Shown here: piece by piece, positions 2,283 to 20,809 of the stretch
Layout: every line of letters begins with the position of its first letter
How positions within the stretch are numbered: position 1 is the first letter of the stretch
Notes under the pieces: generated by a model
Database searches by the model: none
What the model was told of the DNA's origin: nothing
Seen by the model: the letters and a program-made list of their open reading frames with translations, nothing else
Source: Macrostomum hystrix
Taxonomy: Eukaryota > Animalia > Platyhelminthes
DNA length: 64,000 bases
Direction: 5' to 3'
NCBI GenBank assembly: GCA_950097015.1
Contig: CATNEN010000014.1
Coordinates: 744,001-808,000, forward strand
Position numbers and translations under genes: made by a program

Positions 2283-3031
2283 ATGTCAGTTCAGGCTCTG
2301 ATTGAACAAGCGATTGCCAGACAAAGAAACTGCTCAGGAAAATGGAGACCCACTCAGCGGATGAGGGCACGGACGACTTGTACCGCACCGCGGCCGACCT
2401 GGCCAGAAAGATTCAGGCGAGCATTGAGGCAATGCGCGCTCAGCCACTGCCGCCGCAGCAGCAGCAGTTGCAGCCGCAGCTTCATGACTTGCTGACACAG
2501 TGCGTGCAACAGCTGGGTCAGAGGTTCTTGCCACCGGCTGAGGAGCAGCAGCAGCAGGTTAGGCCTTTGAATAATCAGGAAAGGCTTGTTGAGCGGGAGC
2601 AGCAGGTGTGGCTGGGCCAGGACGCTTTGGTTGCTGGCGAACCATTTCAGCAGCAACAGCGGAAGCCGACGGTTCGTCGGCGGTGTCACCATGACGAGCT
2701 GGAACAGCAGCGGAGGCCGCAGCAGCTGCCACCTTCTGGCGATAAGGTCCAGCGTGGCCTTATACAGCCTCATTATCAGCGCGATGAAGAGCAACAGTGG
2801 AAGCAGAAGAATCCGCAGAGGCGGTCCAGAAAGTCGAGCGGGTGCGAGCGGCAGTCGGAGCCGCAGCCGGCGGCCTTCAATGCTAGCAATCGAGTGCGCC
2901 TTGAGCCCAGCCTGCTGAATCTGGTCCTGCGGCTGGACGGCCGAATCGGTGATGACGGCTCGCTGATTGTGAAGGCCAGCGTTCACCCGGATCGCAGAGC
3001 TGCCGTAGACGAAGCCGGTTGCTCCAACTGA
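2283..3031 (+). CDS. Orphan Gln-rich protein, probable N-terminal coiled coil; apparent 1-nt frameshift near 2325
   Basis: 229-aa ORF 2342-3031. Adding one A at caaagaaa joins ATG 2283 in frame (MSVQALIEQAIARQKKLLRKMETHS). No recognised domain. Confidence 0.45.
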
Positions 3032-14302: not shown

Positions 14303-15891
14303 GCTCCTGCTGCACGAGTCATCAGGTGACCTGACGGCATTCCTTACTCACCAGGGTCTGTATCGCTACTGCAGGGTGCCGTTCGGCGTTGCTTCGGCAC
14401 CGGCGGCATTCCAGAGGATGCTGGACGACCTGGTGTCTGATCTGCGCGGTGTTGAGCACATCCTGGACGACTTCATCGTCTTCGGAGCAACTGAAGCCGA
14501 GCACAACTCGAGGCTGCGAGCACTGCTGAAGCGATTGGAGGACGCCGGTCTCACTGCCAACAAGGACAAGTGCCAGCTGCGGAGGACTGAGATTGAGTTC
14601 TTTGGCTTCATCTTCTCAGCCGACGGCATGCGACAGTCTGAGAGTCAGACCAAGGCCTTCAGCGAGCTGCGCCCGCCGACCGACAGGAAGGAGCTGCAGG
14701 CGTTCCTGGGATCCGTCAACTATCTGATGCGGTTCGTGCCCAACTTCGCTGAGGTCACGGCGCCACTGCGGCCTCTGCTGAAAAGCGACGCGGTGTTCGA
14801 ATAGTCGACGGAGTGCGAGAAGGCATTCGAGACACTAAAAGCGACAATCTGCAGTCCGCCGGTCCTAGCTCACTTCGACCCAGGGGCCGAGACGATCGTC
14901 ACTAGCGACGCCAGTGCAGAGTCCCTCCCAGGTCCAAGATGGCATCGAGAGGCCGATCGCCTTCGCCGCCCGAGCCCTGACCGACACGGAGAAGCGATAC
15001 GCAGCGAACGAGCGAGAGGCGCTGGCGAGCCTGTGGGCCATGGAGAAGTGGCACTACTACCTGTACGGGCGCCATTTCGAGCTGCGGACCGACCACCAAA
15101 CGCTGCGCCAGCTCCTGCTGGGACCCAGCGGCACCGGACATCGGCCGCTGCACATCCACCGGTGGTGCGACCGGTTTCAACAGTACGACTTCCACGTGCG
15201 ATACCTGCCGGACAACCGCAACTTCGTGGCCGACATGCTGTCAAGGTGAAGCTGCGGGTCCGACATTAACATCATCCAGCTACCGGACACTGCGATGCCT
15301 CCAGTACGGGTTGTTACCCCGCAGCAGCTAGCGATAAACACAGCCGAGGATGCGGTTCGGCGACAGGTGATTCAGCACGTCACAAGCGGCAAGTGGAGCT
15401 CTACACCGGATAGCGAGCTGCAGCCGTACTTCAAGGTCCGCGAGCGCCTCAGCGTCTGGTAGGACGGCGCCTGCCTGGCTTTCCAAGAACGAGCCGTCAT
15501 TCCCCAGCAGCTGCGGCGCGAGCTTCTGGAGGCAGCGCATTCTCGACATCCGGGGGTGGTGCGCACCAAGCAGCAGCTCCGTGAGTTCGCCTGGTGGCCA
15601 AAGATGGACGGACGTCGAGACGTTCGTCCGGGACTGCGGCGCGTGCGAGACAGGGGAGAAGAATTTCAAGCTGCGACCGGCTCCGCTGCAGCCTCTGCCA
15701 TGGCCGACTACACGGACCACAGTTCGGCGATATCTTCACTAGATTTCTGAGGAATCGGGGCATTCAGCACCTGAAGACCAGCCCGTACCGTCCAAGCACC
15801 AACGGCCAGACCGAGAGACTCAACAGGACGCTGATGGACAGCATCCGAGCGGCCAGTGTGGTGAACATTCCGATGCGCTGCAAGACGCGCT

Positions 15892-18800
15892 TTCTTTCTT
15901 TCGTTTCCAGGGCGCGCCCGATCCGGAGTACCGATAAGGGCGGGGGCGCTAGAGGCGCCCCATACTGCGCAGGAGCTCGACGACCGCGGCCGGGTTCTCC
16001 ATCAAGTTCTCGGCCGGGATTCCGCGTAGGGCTCGGTGGCGGTCGCCTCTTGGACAGTGGAGGACGACGTGGTCGACACTGTCCACCTCGCCGCAATCGG
16101 GACACAGCGGGGACGCGTCGACACCGAGACGGTAGCGGGTCTTTCTATCGACCATGCTCGCGCCCGCGCGAAGTTGGTTGACCAGGACCTGTTGTTTCCG
16201 CGGCAGACCCTGGGGCGGGCTCCAGAAAGGGCCGACTGCTATGATATCCAGGGCGCGCCGGCAGCGTCGGGTGGCTGCTCTGGCGGCGTCCAACTGGATC
16301 GGGACCTGACTTTGGTCTAGTTTTGCCGCCCTGGCCGCCGCCTGATCGGCGGTCTCGTTGCCGGTAATACCGCAGTGGGCCGGAACCCAGCAGAAGCCAA
16401 TCTTGGTGCCTAGCTCGATCAGGTCCAGAATGAGCTGCCAGCAGTCGGCTGCTACTGAGTCCCTCTGCCTAAGTGGCCCGGCGCTCAGGGTCGTGATGGC
16501 GCTCAGGCTGTCGGTGGCGATGGTGATGTCCGGGGGTCTGTCTGCCGCGGTGTTGCAGAGGCGGAGGCCCTCTCGGATAGCGGTGAGTTCGGCCGTGAAG
16601 CTGCTGCATAGGGCGCCCGCCGCAGACATGCGGGCTGCCTCTGGTGGAAGCCATTGTGCGACTGCTGCTCCCCCGCCGTTTCTGCAACCGTCCTGTACCG
16701 AGCCGTCGGTCCAGATGACGTGCTCCGTGAGACGGGACACGGTTGGTTCGGCGAGGGCGGCGCGAAGTTCTGCTGGCATTTGTCGGGTTGCTTCTTTGGC
16801 GGCCGATGTGTCGAAGCGGACTTCTAGGCTTCTGCTGATGGTCCACGGTGCTGGGCCGATTGCCGTTGGTGCTCTTGGGTGGGCCTCAAGCGTGGTGCTG
16901 CATTCCAGCTCTTGCGCGATGCGGCGCCAGCAGGCGCGGTACGGGCGGTTGGCATCCGAGAGCGCGTCCGGGATGCGTTCCCCGCGCTGGCCGTCGTTGG
17001 CCCGGTTCTTCATTGCGGCTTCGTAGGTCCGGTTTTTGAGTCTTGGTCGCTCGTTCGCGGTTGCTGCTTGGTGCGCTGGGATGTCGGCCGGTAGTCTGAC
17101 CATCCTCTCGCGGAGGTTGCTAGCTCTTTCCGCGGCGATGTGGTGGAGGGGCGGCAGGTTGGCGACGGCCAGCAGTTTGTCCGTCCGAGAGGGCATCACG
17201 CAGCCGGTGATTAGGCGTGCACACGCGTTCTGCTGCCTCTCCACAAGTGCCCGGTTGCTTGGTGCTGCGCTCGTTAACCAAATGGCACTGCCGTAGTCCG
17301 CAATGGAGCGGCAGGTTGCGATGTAGGCTGCGCGCAGTGTTTTCTGGTCGGCGCCTGTTTGTCTGTCTGCGAGCATCTGGATCGGTCGGCGTCTAGCTGC
17401 CATTTTCCGTCTGACATCCTTGGCATGTTCTCCGAAACCGAGGTGGTCGTCGAATTTGACCCCTAGGAAGGTCGGGTTCGCCTCGAACCGCAGTGGGTCT
17501 CCGTTGATGTTGAGGTCGAGTCTTATCTTGCCTCTGTTTTCGGCCGGGGATAAAGTGAAGGTGCTGTAACTGCACTTCGCGGTGCTGAGCTCGACTTTCC
17601 ATCTCTTACACCACCCGGCGATGGCGTCCAGAGCCGGTTGCAGGATGTTCTTGCATTCTTGAAGTTTTTCCTTGGTAGCGAGTATCGCGCTGTCGTCGGC
17701 GTAAAGGCTCACACTCGTGTCCGGTGAAGCGGCGTGGATGGTGTCTGGTAGGTCATTGATGTAAACCAGCCATAGCAGCGGGGCCAGGACGCTGCCTTGT
17801 GGGAGCCCCTCGCGGAAGGTGCGTTCCTTACTGTTGCTGGTGCCTACTCGGACCTTGGCCCTTCTATCCGCCAGAAAGCTGTTGATCCACCTGAGGACAC
17901 AGGGTGGGGTGCCGACCTCTTTAAGTTTCAGGAGGAGGGCTCTCTTCCAGACCCTGTCGTAAGCGCGGGAGAAGTCCAGGAGACCAAGGACAGATCGCAT
18001 CGCTGGGGATCTTTCGAAGCCATCGAAGATTTGTTGTGAGATGCGGGCGATCTGCTCCTCGCATGATCTGCCCTTCCGGAACCCGGCTTGCACTCCACTG
18101 ATCTTGCCGTTGGACTCCAAGAAGTAGCTGAGACGGTGGTAGACCAGTCGTTCCGCGACCTTAGCGATACAGCTGGTGAGGGCGACCGGTCTGTAACTGC
18201 CGAGTTCCTCCGCTGGCTTGCCGCGCTTCGGGATAGGAATTATTGTGGCGCGCCGCCATTGGTGCGGGCATTTTCCGGTCAGCCACGACTTGTTCCCCAG
18301 ATCGAGCAGTCTCTTCTCCGTGGGGCTTGCGAGGTGCTTCAGCATCTCGTTCGTAACCTGATCGTCGCCGGGGCTCTTGCCGGACTTAAGCCCGGTCAGG
18401 ACGTTCTTTAGCTCCGCTGCAGAGAAGGCTGAGCAAAGCCCCTTACGATCGTTGTTGTTACAGCAGGGTGCTTGCATAGCTCTATAGGCCTGGTGGTTGA
18501 TGGAGCGGTCGTCGTGGTCCCGTGGGATCCGTGAGATGCTGGCGTAGAGACTTCAGAACGCTTCTGACTTTTCTCTATCGTTGGTGGCGGTTCTGGGCGA
18601 GCCGCCACGGGTCGGGTCGGCCGGGATCTTGAGCGCCGCGTTCGGTGGGGGTGGTGCTGGGTCGCCGCGCAGAGACCGCATGATAGCGAAGAGGTCAGAG
18701 TTGATGTTCAGCGACGCTGTCTTTTCTTTCCAGAAAGCGGCTTTCTCTCTCTGGATCGTGTTGCGGACGTTCTCGCGGGTCGCTTGGTACGCTTCTAGGT

Positions 18801-20496
18801 CGCTTTTTTCCCTGCTTGTTTCTGCTTGTTTGCGGGCTTGCGCGTTCTCCTTGCAGGCCTTGTCGCAGGCTTCTGTCCAGAAGGGCTTACCGGGGGTGCT
18901 GCGGGCTCCTCTGGGGATGCACTCCAGGGCTGCAGTCAGGATGTTGTCGCTGAGCCTTTGGTGATCGAAGTCCACGCTGGAACCTGACTCGGGTTTGCTC
19001 GGCCTGAGCTTAGCCTCTCGGTTGTCGAGCGATTGTTTGTACGCCTTCCAGTCGGCTTTCTTGAAACACCAGCGCGTCTGGCGATTCCGTTTTCCACTGG
19101 CAGATGTCTTAGTCAGCTCGTAGAGTAGGGGCAGGTGGTCGCTGCCGATACACTCGGTTGTCCGCCAGCTGGGACGGCAGACTGCGGTGAGGTTAGGTGA
19201 GCACCAAGTTAGATCCGGACTGGACTTGCCTCCTGTGGCCGGGTTTGTCCTCGTGTGGGCGGACGGGAGGTTGCAGAGGTGTAGGCTGCGTCGGAGCGCC
19301 CACTGTTCGATGCAATCTCCTCTGTCGTCGTCCGGTTGGTGCTCGTCCCAGCTACCGTGGCCGTTGAAGTCGCCGCCGATGACACCGCGCGTGGTGACCG
19401 GGATGAGGTCCCAGTCGGGCTCCTAGTTGTCTTGTTGCCGCTGGTCGCTGTTTGGTGGTGCGTACACGGAGGTGATGTTAAACTTGCCTTTGCCCTTTGG
19501 AATGATGGTGACTGTGGCCCAGTCCATCGGCCCATCGCTGCTTGTTCGTGGCTCCATGAATGGGATGTCGTTGCGCACCAGTATTAGCACGCCTCCGCGG
19601 CCCGGGGGCGCTGTGTTTTTTCTTGATTTTTTAGTGTTTTGTCCCCTAGTAGCTCTGTTGCCGGTTGCGAGTTCGATCTGCGGTGGTGGCAGTGCGTTGG
19701 CTGTTCTGGTGGCTTCCAATTCGGTGTCCGGGCCCTTGTCCGTGGTTGCTGCCGGGGCCGTTTGCTGATTGTGGTTGTCCTTGTCCCCTTCGCGTTCCGG
19801 CCATGGCTGGTCCCGGTTGATGCAGGCCTGTCTGCCGCTGCGACAACCCTGGCACCAGGTCGTCCTGTCGTTTGGCCAGCGTAGCCGGCATCGCGGTCTG
19901 GCGGTGGCGCGCCGGCGGGGGGGCCGTTTGGAGCTGCTTGCGTCATCTGGGTGTTCTGGAGTCGTGGGCTTCCGCCGTCCTGGCGGTCGTCGTCAGTAGT
20001 GGTGGCGGTGACCTCCGGGGTATGTTCTGGTTTTGGTGCGCCATCCTTGCGGGCCGCGACGCTGTAGCCGTGGGGCGGGATGAAGTTGGCTCCTTGACGC
20101 AATTTCGTCTCCTGGAGGAGGGCAGCGCAAGGTTGGGTTGTCTGAGCCTCTCGGCCAGCTCCGTACGGCGGGCCTGCAGCCCATTACAGTTAAGCTGCAG
20201 GACCAGGAGCTCTGGGCCGGGTCTCTTAACCCTTCTGTGCTGTCTTCTCGGGCGGCTGTTCGTTTTCGGTTCACCAGCCGTGGCGTCTCCGCCCCTGAGA
20301 CGCATCACAAGATTCAGCTCCTCGGACGCGTCCTGATCGGTGGTTTCGTTGGGTCGATCTCCTCGTCTTGCGCAGTATCCCTGAAGGGTGTGACATTTCG
20401 TCGGCAACGGTGGTGTGCCGTCCAGGGGCCCCTCGTGGAGGGAGTCACTTGCCGCGTGGGTATGATGGTACTCACGCACCGGGTCGGCCCGGTCCC
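15892..20496 (-). mobile_element. Ingi-like non-LTR retrotransposon (APE-RT-RNase H-C-terminal Zn finger), full length, 4605 bp
   Basis: 12-bp TSD gcaagacgcgct at 15880-15891 and 20497-20508; (GAAA)n tail; APE LQLNCNG, LQET, GDFN, SDH; RT YRPVALTS, QGSVLAP, YADD; RNase H WTDGS, AEL, TDS, HCG-GNE-AD; CPDC-H-C. Two stops (19423, 18553) and two 1-nt frameshifts. No ORF1. Confidence 0.92.
20390..20496 (-). ncRNA. Putative HDV-like self-cleaving ribozyme at the LINE 5' end
   Basis: Folded by hand: P2 GUGAC/GUCAC, P3 CCC/GGG, L3 UCCACGA, P1 3' strand GCCCCU, P1.1 GG, P4 CGGCA/UGCCG, J4/2 CGAA (catalytic C at 20400). P1 5' strand is imperfect (GGGAC, one A-C mismatch, G1 missing). Confidence 0.55.
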
Positions 20497-20809
20497 GCAA
20501 GACGCGCTGCTGCAGTTCCTTGAGGCTTACCGCAGCACTCCACACGCCCTGACTGAGAAGAGCCCGGCTGAGCTGATGCTTGGCAGGCGATGGCGCACAG
20601 CCCTGTCTCTGCTGGCCCCGTCAAAGGACACCGCGGTTGCGCATAACCGAGATGGCCCAGCGAATCCAAGAGCGCTAGCAGTTGACGGCAGCCTACACGG
20701 ACCAGCGGCGAAGAGCGCGACCGCCGGCACTGCGCGCCGGCGACTGGGTTCGGGTGCGGCGTCCAACACGACGGGGCAAGCTCGGAACGCGGCTCTCGGC
20801 GCCGCTGCT

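What the first reader, a model, noticed from the sequence alone, without database searches (positions are those of the whole stretch)
20288..20317. Ubiquitin C-terminus mimic (LNLVMRLRGG) leading the LINE polyprotein
Seen: in the endonuclease reading frame, about 25 codons before the APE domain, the element encodes EELNLVMRLRGG|DATAG. It matches 8 of the last 10 residues of ubiquitin (LHLVLRLRGG), with M for L. The frame is open back to the element 5' end and has no ATG before this motif. Established: deubiquitinases cleave after LRGG; Ingi/L1Tc and other APE LINEs use N-terminal 2A peptides to release a leader. No DxExNPGP is present here. Inference: this element may use host DUBs instead of 2A to trim a non-AUG-initiated leader made from an uncapped, ribozyme-cleaved RNA. 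That would be a ribozyme plus ubiquitin-mimic expression module. No full ubiquitin fold is evident. I cannot check the literature, so prior reports of RLRGG in retroelements are not excluded.
Basis: partly seen in the sequence, partly recalled or inferred. Interest (0 to 1): 0.82.

Follow-up and report, generated by a model that had tools for sequence, protein, structure and literature searches.

The report
Ubiquitin-tail cleavage motif heading a LINE
A family of jumping genes (LINEs) carries, just before its DNA-cutting enzyme, a conserved copy of the last ten residues of ubiquitin without the rest of ubiquitin, most likely so that a host ubiquitin-trimming enzyme cuts off the leader peptide, where related LINEs use a viral-type 2A peptide.

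Summary
On the minus strand, window 20288-20317 encodes LNLVMRLRGG, which matches 8 of ubiquitin's last 10 residues. It lies in a full-length, TSD-flanked APE-RT-RNase H LINE (15891-20496) that is now frameshifted.

It is not chance. None of 100 simulated windows gives such a match. Ten diverged LINE lineages in this genome, one copy in another assembly and one metagenomic protein keep [DE]-L-x-x-V-[LM]-R-[LIF]-R-G-G about 23-33 residues before the endonuclease. Synonymous codons vary freely, and one lineage is 10/10 (LHLVLRLRGG).

No ubiquitin fold precedes the motif (Pfam, hhalign, AlphaFold2). The element encodes no protease, and the segment is predicted flexible. Related LINEs elsewhere carry a 2A peptide in this same slot. 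The element's 5' end is an HDV-like ribozyme with covarying helices.

Best reading (about 55%): this is a fold-less ubiquitin-tail site that a host deubiquitinase cuts to shed the leader. The likeliest enzyme is the ZUFSP/ZUP1 type, which cleaves bare RLRGG and is present in the host with its key residues. Cleavage itself is untested.

First readers of this scan flagged the same motif in four other windows of this genome, with no follow-up recorded. I found no prior report in the literature I searched.

The parts
20497..20507 (.). 5' copy of the target-site duplication (GCGCGTCTTGC on the element's strand), preceded by CTGCAGCA
   Evidence: the same 11 bp abut both ends of the element.
15891..20496 (-). 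Full-length LINE (4,606 nt): ribozyme, leader, ubiquitin tail, APE, RT, RNase H, CCHC, (GAAA)n tail. 99.3% identical to the intact sibling L014, but broken by two 1-nt deletions.
   Evidence: Pfam; ends; alignment to L014; deletions near window 20140 and 19924; an independent contig stops matching exactly at 20496.
20390..20496 (-). HDV-like ribozyme (element nt 1-107). P1 GGGACC/GGCCCC (one A.C mismatch), 42-nt J1/2 insert, P2 GUGAC/GUCAC, P3 CCU/AGG, L3 CCACG, P4 CGGCA/UGCCG, J4/2 CGAAA. It overlaps the first 35 or so leader codons.
   Evidence: Rfam CPEB3_ribozyme sub-threshold hit at the 5' end of family F; helices and covariation across families.
20318..20389 (-). Variable part of the leader (24 codons), open reading frame, not conserved between families
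   Evidence: length and sequence differ between families.
20288..20317 (-). Ubiquitin C-terminal tail motif LNLVMRLRGG. The predicted cut is after the GG codon, between window 20288 and 20287.
20213..20287 (-). Basic, Pro-rich linker DATAGEPKTNSRPRRQHRRVKRPGP (NLS-like). Its first residue Asp would be the new N-terminus.
   Evidence: AlphaFold2 pLDDT is below 50 here.
19125..20212 (-). APE endonuclease (frameshifted in this copy), with a large insertion that holds a conserved 4-Cys motif
17518..18234 (-). Reverse transcriptase domain
   Evidence: RVT_1, E = 3e-34.
16324..16722 (-). RNase H domain
   Evidence: RNase_H, E = 4e-13.
16054..16104 (-). C-terminal CCHC knuckle (CPDCGEVDSVDHVVLHC)
   Evidence: translation.
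15891..15948 (-). 3' UTR and (GAAA)n tail
15880..15890 (.). 3' copy of the target-site duplication

Best explanation
The motif is a functional, translated copy of ubiquitin's beta5 strand and tail (L67-x-x-V70-L71-R72-L73-R74-G75-G76) without the ubiquitin fold. It sits in a flexible stretch between a short leader and the APE endonuclease of a single-ORF LINE.

Proposed mechanism:
1. The element RNA is made as a co-transcript, and the HDV-like ribozyme at its first base trims it (supported by covariation; activity inferred).
2. Translation starts somewhere in the leader. Some families have an upstream AUG. Others would need a non-AUG codon, or read-in from an uncleaved host transcript, because these LINEs insert in frame behind CAG repeats. 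This step is inferred.
3. A host deubiquitinase cuts after GG. This removes the 35-80-residue leader and leaves a defined N-terminus, usually Asp, on the basic linker and endonuclease (inferred, the key untested step). The best candidate enzyme is the ZUFSP/ZUP1 family. It cleaves the bare RLRGG peptide better than whole ubiquitin and grips Arg72 and Arg74, which are the residues that never vary in the LINE motif.

The module does the job that 2A peptides do in related LINEs.
For: (a) Protein-level selection. Ten lineages only 40-52% identical in the tail-plus-endonuclease block keep V, R, R, G, G invariant. Each residue uses 3-6 different codons (R74: AGG, CGG, AGA, CGC, CGA, CGT), while residues on both sides vary. 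Family F is 10/10 identical to the host ubiquitin tail but differs at 6/30 nucleotides, all synonymous. A copy in assembly GCA_002269645.1 has NLHRVLRLRGG with yet other codons.
(b) The tail is internal to the ORF. Leu replaces Met in four in-genome lineages. Families C, F and G have in-frame AUGs upstream. Family I has no AUG before the middle of the endonuclease.
(c) Same slot as 2A. Of 77 LINE-type relatives with at least 45 residues upstream of the endonuclease, 9 carry D[VI]ExNPGP 27-101 residues before it and 2 carry the ubiquitin tail. Odon et al. 2013 (PMC3708506) show that 2A sits in the N-terminal region of ORF2p, in some elements immediately upstream of APE. L1Tc combines an HDV-like ribozyme with 2A (PMC5814959).
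(d) The element has no protease. Pfam finds only APE, RT and RNase H in the intact 1,515-aa ORF.
(e) The segment looks accessible. AlphaFold2 gives the endonuclease core pLDDT 80-93, the tail block about 49-57 and the linker below 50.
(f) The residue after GG is never Pro (D x7, N x2, E, H, A), as deubiquitinase cleavage requires.
(g) Enzyme plausibility. PMC8776766 reports that ZUFSP enzymes cleave RLRGG-AMC faster than Ub-AMC, form salt bridges to R72 and R74, and are frequent false positives in split-ubiquitin screens. The host has a ZUFSP orthologue (E = 5e-40 to 7OJE) that keeps the catalytic Cys and the equivalents of D406, W423 and E428. It also has more than 20 USP-domain hits and UCH enzymes.
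(h) The ribozyme is supported: P1, P2, P3 and P4 covary across families, and its first base is the first base of the element.
Against: - No experiment or proteomic or RNA data bear on cleavage. Only one weak sequencing run held the region.
- Apart from ZUFSP, deubiquitinases need a folded S1 ubiquitin. UCHL3 and PLpro cut RLRGG-AMC orders of magnitude more slowly than Ub-AMC (PMC8776766). There is no fold here.
- ZUFSP cleavage of a linear peptide bond after a truncated ubiquitin is only inferred, from the split-ubiquitin false positives.
- AlphaFold2 draws the tail block as a low-confidence helix, not as an extended strand.
- Docking to a host UCH gave no answer.
- The tail-bearing LINEs were seen only in this genome, one other assembly and one metagenomic protein, so the function could be a quirk of this lineage.
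Confidence: 0.55

Rival explanations
1. The motif is a functional peptide that is not cleaved. It acts as a docking mimic, for example by recruiting a protein that recognises the ubiquitin tail or beta5 surface, or as a short structural or regulatory helix of the LINE protein's N-terminus.
For: Protein-level conservation shows function but not cleavage. AlphaFold2 predicts a helix over the block. Most deubiquitinases would not cut a fold-less tail.
Against: The known readers of the RLRGG tail (ZnF-UBP domains) need a free C-terminal GG (abstracts). The block sits where relatives have a separation device, 2A. The leader upstream is unconstrained, as expected for a discarded piece. The residue after GG is never Pro.
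Confidence: 0.2
2. The site is cleaved, but not by a deubiquitinase. Another host protease, or an unrecognised activity of the element's own protein, would make the cut.
For: The position is equivalent to 2A. There is no direct evidence on which enzyme acts.
Against: Identity to the ubiquitin tail reaches 10/10 in family F, including R72, the residue that separates ubiquitin from NEDD8. No protease domain is found in the ORF.
Confidence: 0.1
3. The Met of LVM is simply the start codon in the window's family, and the upstream LNLV match to ubiquitin is incidental.
For: In family A the first in-frame ATG is this Met. Five lineages have Met here.
Against: Four in-genome lineages, and the copy in the other assembly, have Leu instead. 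L at -4 and V at -1 relative to the Met/Leu position are conserved through synonymous changes (CTG/TTG/CTC/CTT; GTG/GTT/GTC) in both Met and Leu lineages. Families C, F and G have AUGs further upstream.
Confidence: 0.05
4. The conservation reflects an RNA or DNA element (promoter, IRES, ribozyme extension), or is a chance match.
For: The neighbouring 5' block (…CCACGAGG.GCCCCUGG…) is conserved at the nucleotide level because it is the ribozyme core.
Against: In the tail block the third codon positions vary freely, and even first positions change (AGG/CGG), while the peptide stays the same. The ribozyme ends 72 nt upstream. Simulations gave 0/100 matches by chance.
Confidence: 0.02

Closest known systems
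2A / StopGo peptides in the N-terminal region of ORF2p of APE-type LINEs (L1Tc, Ingi, CR1, Rex1, Crack; Heras 2006; Odon 2013, PMC3708506)
   Same: Same slot, tens of residues upstream of the APE domain of mostly single-ORF LINEs. Same presumed job of separating an N-terminal leader from the enzyme. In L1Tc it is also combined with a 5' HDV-like ribozyme (PMC5814959). Close relatives of this family by endonuclease sequence carry 2A there.
   Different: No D[VI]ExNPGP motif. 2A acts by ribosomal peptide-bond skipping and needs no enzyme. Here a host protease would be required, and the new N-terminus is Asp, Glu or Asn instead of Pro.
Natural ubiquitin fusions (polyubiquitin, Ub-ribosomal protein genes) and the ubiquitin-fusion technique
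   Same: Cleavage after …LRLRGG by host deubiquitinases, whatever the next residue is except Pro. One LINE lineage has the exact last ten residues.
   Different: No beta-grasp domain. Only about 10-15 residues resemble ubiquitin.
ZUFSP/ZUP1-family deubiquitinase substrates: RLRGG-AMC and the C-terminal half of split ubiquitin (PMC8776766)
   Same: A fold-less or truncated ubiquitin tail is accepted. R72 and R74 are the recognition residues, and these are invariant in the LINE motif. The host has an orthologue with the key residues.
   Different: Those are artificial substrates. A natural fold-less substrate of this kind was not described in the papers I searched. Cleavage of this LINE is untested.
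Viral use of the ubiquitin system for polyprotein processing: cytopathic pestiviruses with captured host ubiquitin, and coronavirus PLpro LXGG sites (from my own knowledge, plus abstracts)
   Same: A selfish genome uses an LRGG-type site to release a protein.
   Different: Pestiviruses carry whole ubiquitin monomers. Coronaviruses bring their own protease. This LINE has neither.
LINEs headed by HDV-like ribozymes (R2, L1Tc Pr77/L1TcRz, RTE; PMC3185411, PMC3774820; Ruminski 2011, cited from the reference list only)
   Same: A nested double-pseudoknot ribozyme whose cut site is the first base of the element. The ORF overlaps the ribozyme. An AUG is often missing.
   Different: None of those is reported with a ubiquitin-tail motif. 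In the window's family P1 is imperfect and is followed by a 42-nt insert.

Membership tests
Ubiquitin / ubiquitin-like domain (PF00240, beta-grasp) | Beta-grasp fold of about 70 residues | tested here: not met
   Pfam finds nothing in the leader at E up to 1. hhalign aligns only ubiquitin residues 62-76. AlphaFold2 gives pLDDT 62, pTM 0.23 and no strands. Leaders are 35-80 residues long, and the first 18-35 are encoded by the ribozyme.
Ubiquitin / ubiquitin-like domain (PF00240, beta-grasp) | C-terminal LRLRGG tail with R72 | tested here: met
   8/10 in the window and 10/10 in family F. V70, R72, R74 and G75 are invariant.
2A / StopGo peptide | D[VI]ExNPGP motif | tested here: not met
   No NPGP in the intact 1,515-aa ORF.
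2A / StopGo peptide | [quoted passage not shown] | tested here: met
   The tail lies 23-33 residues before the first endonuclease strand. 2A lies 27-101 residues before it in relatives.
Deubiquitinase substrate (linear ubiquitin-fusion type) | Hydrolysis of the peptide bond after G76 | not testable with these tools
   This needs a cleavage assay. The docking job gave no answer.
Deubiquitinase substrate (linear ubiquitin-fusion type) | Residue after GG is not proline | tested here: met
   D x7, N x2, E, H and A in 12 lineages.
ZUFSP/ZUP1 substrate | R72 and R74 (salt bridges) plus G75-G76. No folded S1 ubiquitin is needed. | tested here: met
   R-x-R-G-G is invariant. The requirement is taken from PMC8776766.
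ZUFSP/ZUP1 substrate | A host enzyme with the catalytic Cys and the equivalents of D406, W423 and E428 | tested here: met
   L064 exon: E = 5e-40 to 7OJE and 3e-36 to 6EI1. GWGCGYRN, FD, KW and E are aligned.
HDV-like self-cleaving ribozyme | Nested P1/P1.1/P2/P3/(P4) fold with a catalytic C in J4/2, starting at the cleavage site | tested here: met
   Families F, H and I: P1 6/6, P2 6/6 with three unrelated sequences, P3 covaries, J4/2 is CUAAY. Families A, B, C and the copy in the other assembly: P2, P3 and P4 covary and J4/2 is CGAA. In the window's family P1 has one A.C mismatch.
HDV-like self-cleaving ribozyme | Rfam gathering score for an HDV-type family | tested here: not met
   Best hit is CPEB3_ribozyme at 22 bits against a threshold of 35, E = 0.1, at the first base of family F. 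Nothing was found in the window region.
HDV-like self-cleaving ribozyme | Self-cleavage activity | not testable with these tools
   Needs in vitro transcription.
APE-type non-LTR retrotransposon (APE-RT-RNase H-CCHC layout, as in the I/Ingi group) | APE, RT and RNase H domains in one ORF, target-site duplication, simple-repeat 3' tail | tested here: met
Ingi clade specifically | RT phylogeny placing the element with Ingi/L1Tc | not tested
   No reference set of LINE clades was available.

The most novel reading that the evidence does not exclude
These LINEs have evolved a minimal, fold-less ubiquitin tail as a dedicated substrate for a host deubiquitinase of the ZUFSP type. The cut also exposes an N-terminal Asp, Glu or Asn, which is a destabilising residue under the Arg/N-degron rule (that rule is from my own knowledge), and this would set the half-life of the LINE protein. 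Because the elements insert in frame behind CAG repeats, the same site would free the enzyme from host polyQ-protein fusions whenever the ribozyme fails to cut. Together this would be a three-part expression module of ribozyme, ubiquitin tail and N-degron, and the first natural linear substrate known for ZUFSP-type enzymes.
Probability: 0.15. Interest if true: 0.88.

Novelty: new variant of a known kind. Interest (0 to 1): 0.72.

Why it matters
How single-ORF LINEs that lack a cap or an AUG produce a clean, active protein is only partly understood. 2A peptides are the one known solution. A ubiquitin-tail site would be a second, independent solution that depends on a host enzyme, and so would open a new point of host control over retrotransposition.

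It would also give ubiquitin biology a natural example of a fold-less tail used as a substrate. That bears on the unexplained preference of ZUFSP/ZUP1 enzymes for RLRGG peptides. It could also supply a very short, naturally evolved cleavage tag.

The prediction is easy to test with a reporter of about 300 nt and GG-to-AA mutants.

Tried and rejected
1. I first read 'VSLKELQQRVL…' upstream of the motif as the middle of ubiquitin. It is the antisense of the Ty3/Gypsy integrase into which the LINE inserted.
2. 'HTLQGY' in family A and 'RTL' in family F resemble ubiquitin R54-Y59, but hhalign does not extend beyond residues 62-76, so I do not claim a relic of more of ubiquitin.
3. Rfam found no ribozyme in window 19800-20800 at E up to 1. 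The fold was established by hand and by covariation instead.
4. Complex prediction with the host UCH37-like domain and the tail region scored 0.03, no answer, and is not evidence either way.
5. RNA evidence: one run of uncertain kind held 8% of the words. Its contig only confirms the 5' end and a (CAG)n flank.
6. The word-based protein search found a single outside relative. P0001 could not be traced to a contig.
7. Ruminski et al. 2011 is not held in the library.
8. A 7/10 match at window 2915-2944 (+ strand) has no LINE context and is at the chance level of 0.12 per window.
The only consensus lines shown are those the alignment tool prints for short stretches.

Full report
**The observation**

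The finding lies on the minus strand. The host's own polyubiquitin genes end in …ESTLHLVLRLRGG, so the match is 8 of 10. In six-frame translation the window holds exactly one match of 8/10 or better, and 100 simulated 64-kb sequences gave none.

**The element**

The motif belongs to a LINE on the minus strand, nested in a plus-strand Ty3/Gypsy integrase gene.
- The same 11 bp (GCGCGTCTTGC) abut both ends. This defines the element as window 15891-20496, 4,606 nt, with a (GAAA)n tail.
- The flanks of sibling copies diverge at the same first base.
- An independent public contig stops matching exactly at 20496 and continues into a (CAG)n flank.
- Pfam finds APE endonuclease, reverse transcriptase and RNase H, and no protease, in the intact 1,515-codon ORF of a 99.3%-identical sibling (L014).
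- The window copy carries two 1-nt deletions, near 20140 and 19924, that break the endonuclease frame.

**Conservation**

Searches of the window's own genome found ten lineages that share the layout.
- They are only 40-52% identical over the tail-plus-endonuclease block.
- All keep [DE]-L-x-x-V-[LM]-R-[LIF]-R-G-G, 23-33 residues before the first endonuclease strand. The sequence between the motif and either neighbour differs in length and content.
- Family F reads ELHLVLRLRGG, which is 10/10 to ubiquitin.
- The codon table is decisive. The invariant residues use many codons: V uses GTG/GTT/GTC. R72 uses CGT/CGC/CGG/CGA. R74 uses six codons, including both AGR and CGN. Each Gly uses three.
- Family F differs from the host ubiquitin genes at 6 of 30 nucleotides, all synonymous, so it is not a recent copy of the host gene.
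- Selection therefore acts on the peptide, not on an RNA or DNA signal, and it reaches upstream of the Met.
- That Met is Leu in four in-genome lineages. Families C, F and G have in-frame AUGs further upstream. Family I has none before the middle of the endonuclease. The tail is thus internal to the translated ORF, and the 'internal ATG' rival fails.

**Outside this genome**

A profile search of 1.84 billion representative proteins returned polyubiquitins, which match only the tail block, and 116 LINE-type N-termini.
- Two of the 116 carry the tail. One is P0001, found earlier by the word search. The other is P0002, encoded in NCBI assembly GCA_002269645.1. From memory that assembly is a Macrostomum flatworm; I did not check this.
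- The P0002 copy has the whole module: a (CAG)n flank, a GGGACC start, a ribozyme core with different, compensating helices, and NLHRVLRLRGG|DSN written in yet other codons.
- Among the 77 LINE-type hits with enough upstream sequence, nine carry a 2A motif (D[VI]ExNPGP) 27-101 residues before the endonuclease. That is the same slot.
- Odon et al. 2013 (PMC3708506) documented this N-terminal position of 2A across LINE clades. The paper does not mention ubiquitin.
- L1Tc combines a 5' HDV-like ribozyme with 2A (PMC5814959).

**No ubiquitin fold**

- Pfam finds nothing in the leader.
- A profile of eleven leaders aligns to host ubiquitin only over residues 62-76 (probability 90%, E = 1.4e-6).
- AlphaFold2 on the leader gives mean pLDDT 62 and pTM 0.23, with no strands.
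- Folded together with the endonuclease, the enzyme core reaches pLDDT 80-93. The tail block stays at about 49-57 and the basic linker below 50. The tail is therefore not predicted to pack against the enzyme.

**The ribozyme**

- Rfam gives a sub-threshold CPEB3-ribozyme hit (22 bits, E = 0.1) starting at the first base of family F.
- In families F, H and I my scripts find P1 at 6/6 and P2 at 6/6 with three unrelated sequences. P3 covaries (CCG/CGG, CGU/ACG, CCU/AGG), and J4/2 is CUAAY.
- In families A, B, C and the copy from the other assembly, P2, P3 and P4 covary and J4/2 is CGAA, as in HDV itself.
- In the window's family the ribozyme spans element nt 1-107 (window 20390-20496). Its P1 has one A.C mismatch and is followed by a 42-nt insert.
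- Earlier follow-ups of this scan reached the same view of these ribozymes.

**Mechanism**

The element has no protease, so any cut must be made by the host. Most deubiquitinases need folded ubiquitin, which is the main argument against cleavage. PMC8776766 reports an exception.
- ZUFSP/ZUP1-family enzymes cleave RLRGG-AMC faster than ubiquitin-AMC.
- They hold the tail through salt bridges to Arg72 and Arg74.
- They are frequent false positives in split-ubiquitin screens, which implies they accept N-terminally truncated ubiquitin.
- R-x-R-G-G is exactly the invariant core of the LINE motif.
- The host encodes a ZUFSP orthologue (E = 5e-40 to 7OJE). It keeps the catalytic Cys and the equivalents of ZUP1 D406, W423 and E428.
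- The host also has UCH enzymes and more than 20 USP-domain hits.
- The residue after GG is never proline.

I therefore put about 55% on host-deubiquitinase cleavage that sheds the leader. I put about 20% on a conserved but uncleaved docking or structural role, about 10% on cleavage by some other protease, and little on the remaining rivals. Cleavage, the start site and ribozyme activity are inferred, not shown.

**Novelty**

- Full-text searches for retrotransposon with LRLRGG or RLRGG, for HDV-like ribozyme with non-LTR and ubiquitin, and related terms found no report of a ubiquitin tail in a retroelement.
- Subscription journals and Repbase reports are not covered by those searches.
- First readers of this scan flagged the same motif in four other windows of this genome, and none shows a follow-up.
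- I class it as a new variant of a known kind, the N-terminal leader-release module of APE LINEs, with a different and host-dependent chemistry.

Read laying was given 861 letters.

Noticed in passing
window 20497-20515; L051, L053, L055, L036, L042, L034, L033, L071 5' flanks: All tail-bearing LINE families insert right after CAGCAG, with a TSD of about 11 bp and (GAA)n or (GAAA)n tails. They are therefore CAG-repeat-targeting LINEs. In about 10 of 13 junctions the upstream (CAG)n reads as polyQ in the LINE's own frame, so a host polyQ exon would run straight into the LINE ORF. The constant TSD length and 5' end explain the phase mechanically, so selection for it is not shown.
   Followed up: partly
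window 20285-20287 (codon after GG) and the same position in the other lineages: The residue that cleavage would expose is D (7 lineages), N (2), E, H or A, and never P. All but Ala are destabilising N-terminal residues under the Arg/N-degron rule (from my own knowledge). This hints that the processed LINE protein may be short-lived by design.
   Followed up: no
window 20423-20425 (element nt 72-74), and the equivalent position in all families: An in-frame CUG lies inside the ribozyme's P1 3' strand and P1.1 (CCC CUG GA.) in every family. It is probably fixed by the ribozyme, but it is a candidate non-AUG start codon for the families that lack an AUG.
   Followed up: no
L014:~1000-1400 (alignment A4, positions ~155-195 of its first sequence); window ~19700-20000, frameshifted there: The endonuclease has an insertion of about 100-150 residues between the strands 'GY.VAAR.DG' and 'GRGG.LILVR.D'. 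It holds a conserved four-Cys motif, RPRCRLR[WF]PD.R..WC.GCRSGR.AC..R..PW. This may be a zinc knuckle that reads the CAG-repeat target. AlphaFold2 gives it low confidence.
   Followed up: partly
window 15594-15890 and 20497-~20640, + strand: The LINE interrupts the integrase (rve-like) ORF of a Ty3/Gypsy-type LTR retrotransposon. The two halves read …TERLNRTLMDSIRAA… and …LLQFLEAYRSTPHALTEKSPAELMLGRR….
   Followed up: partly
L053:2914-5100: About 750 codons of a Q-rich minisatellite (QQKQQQH[DEPH][EG]QA…) lie upstream of a family G copy, open and in frame with it. This gives a nominal 2,238-codon ORF.
   Followed up: no
L035 and L052:5100-5200: LINE copies pile up head to tail. A family I copy starts a few bases after the tail of a family A copy, and a family A copy starts after a family I tail, with short CAG-rich spacers between them.
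   Followed up: no
L064 (G000:C1:~7805414-7806570): The host ZUFSP/ZUP1 orthologue is split into at least two exons. The ORF after the first exon runs into a repetitive hydrophobic stretch that is probably an intron.
   Followed up: partly
window 2915-2944, + strand: LNLVLRLDGR matches the ubiquitin tail at 7/10 but has no endonuclease downstream. This is the chance level (0.12 expected per window).
   Followed up: yes
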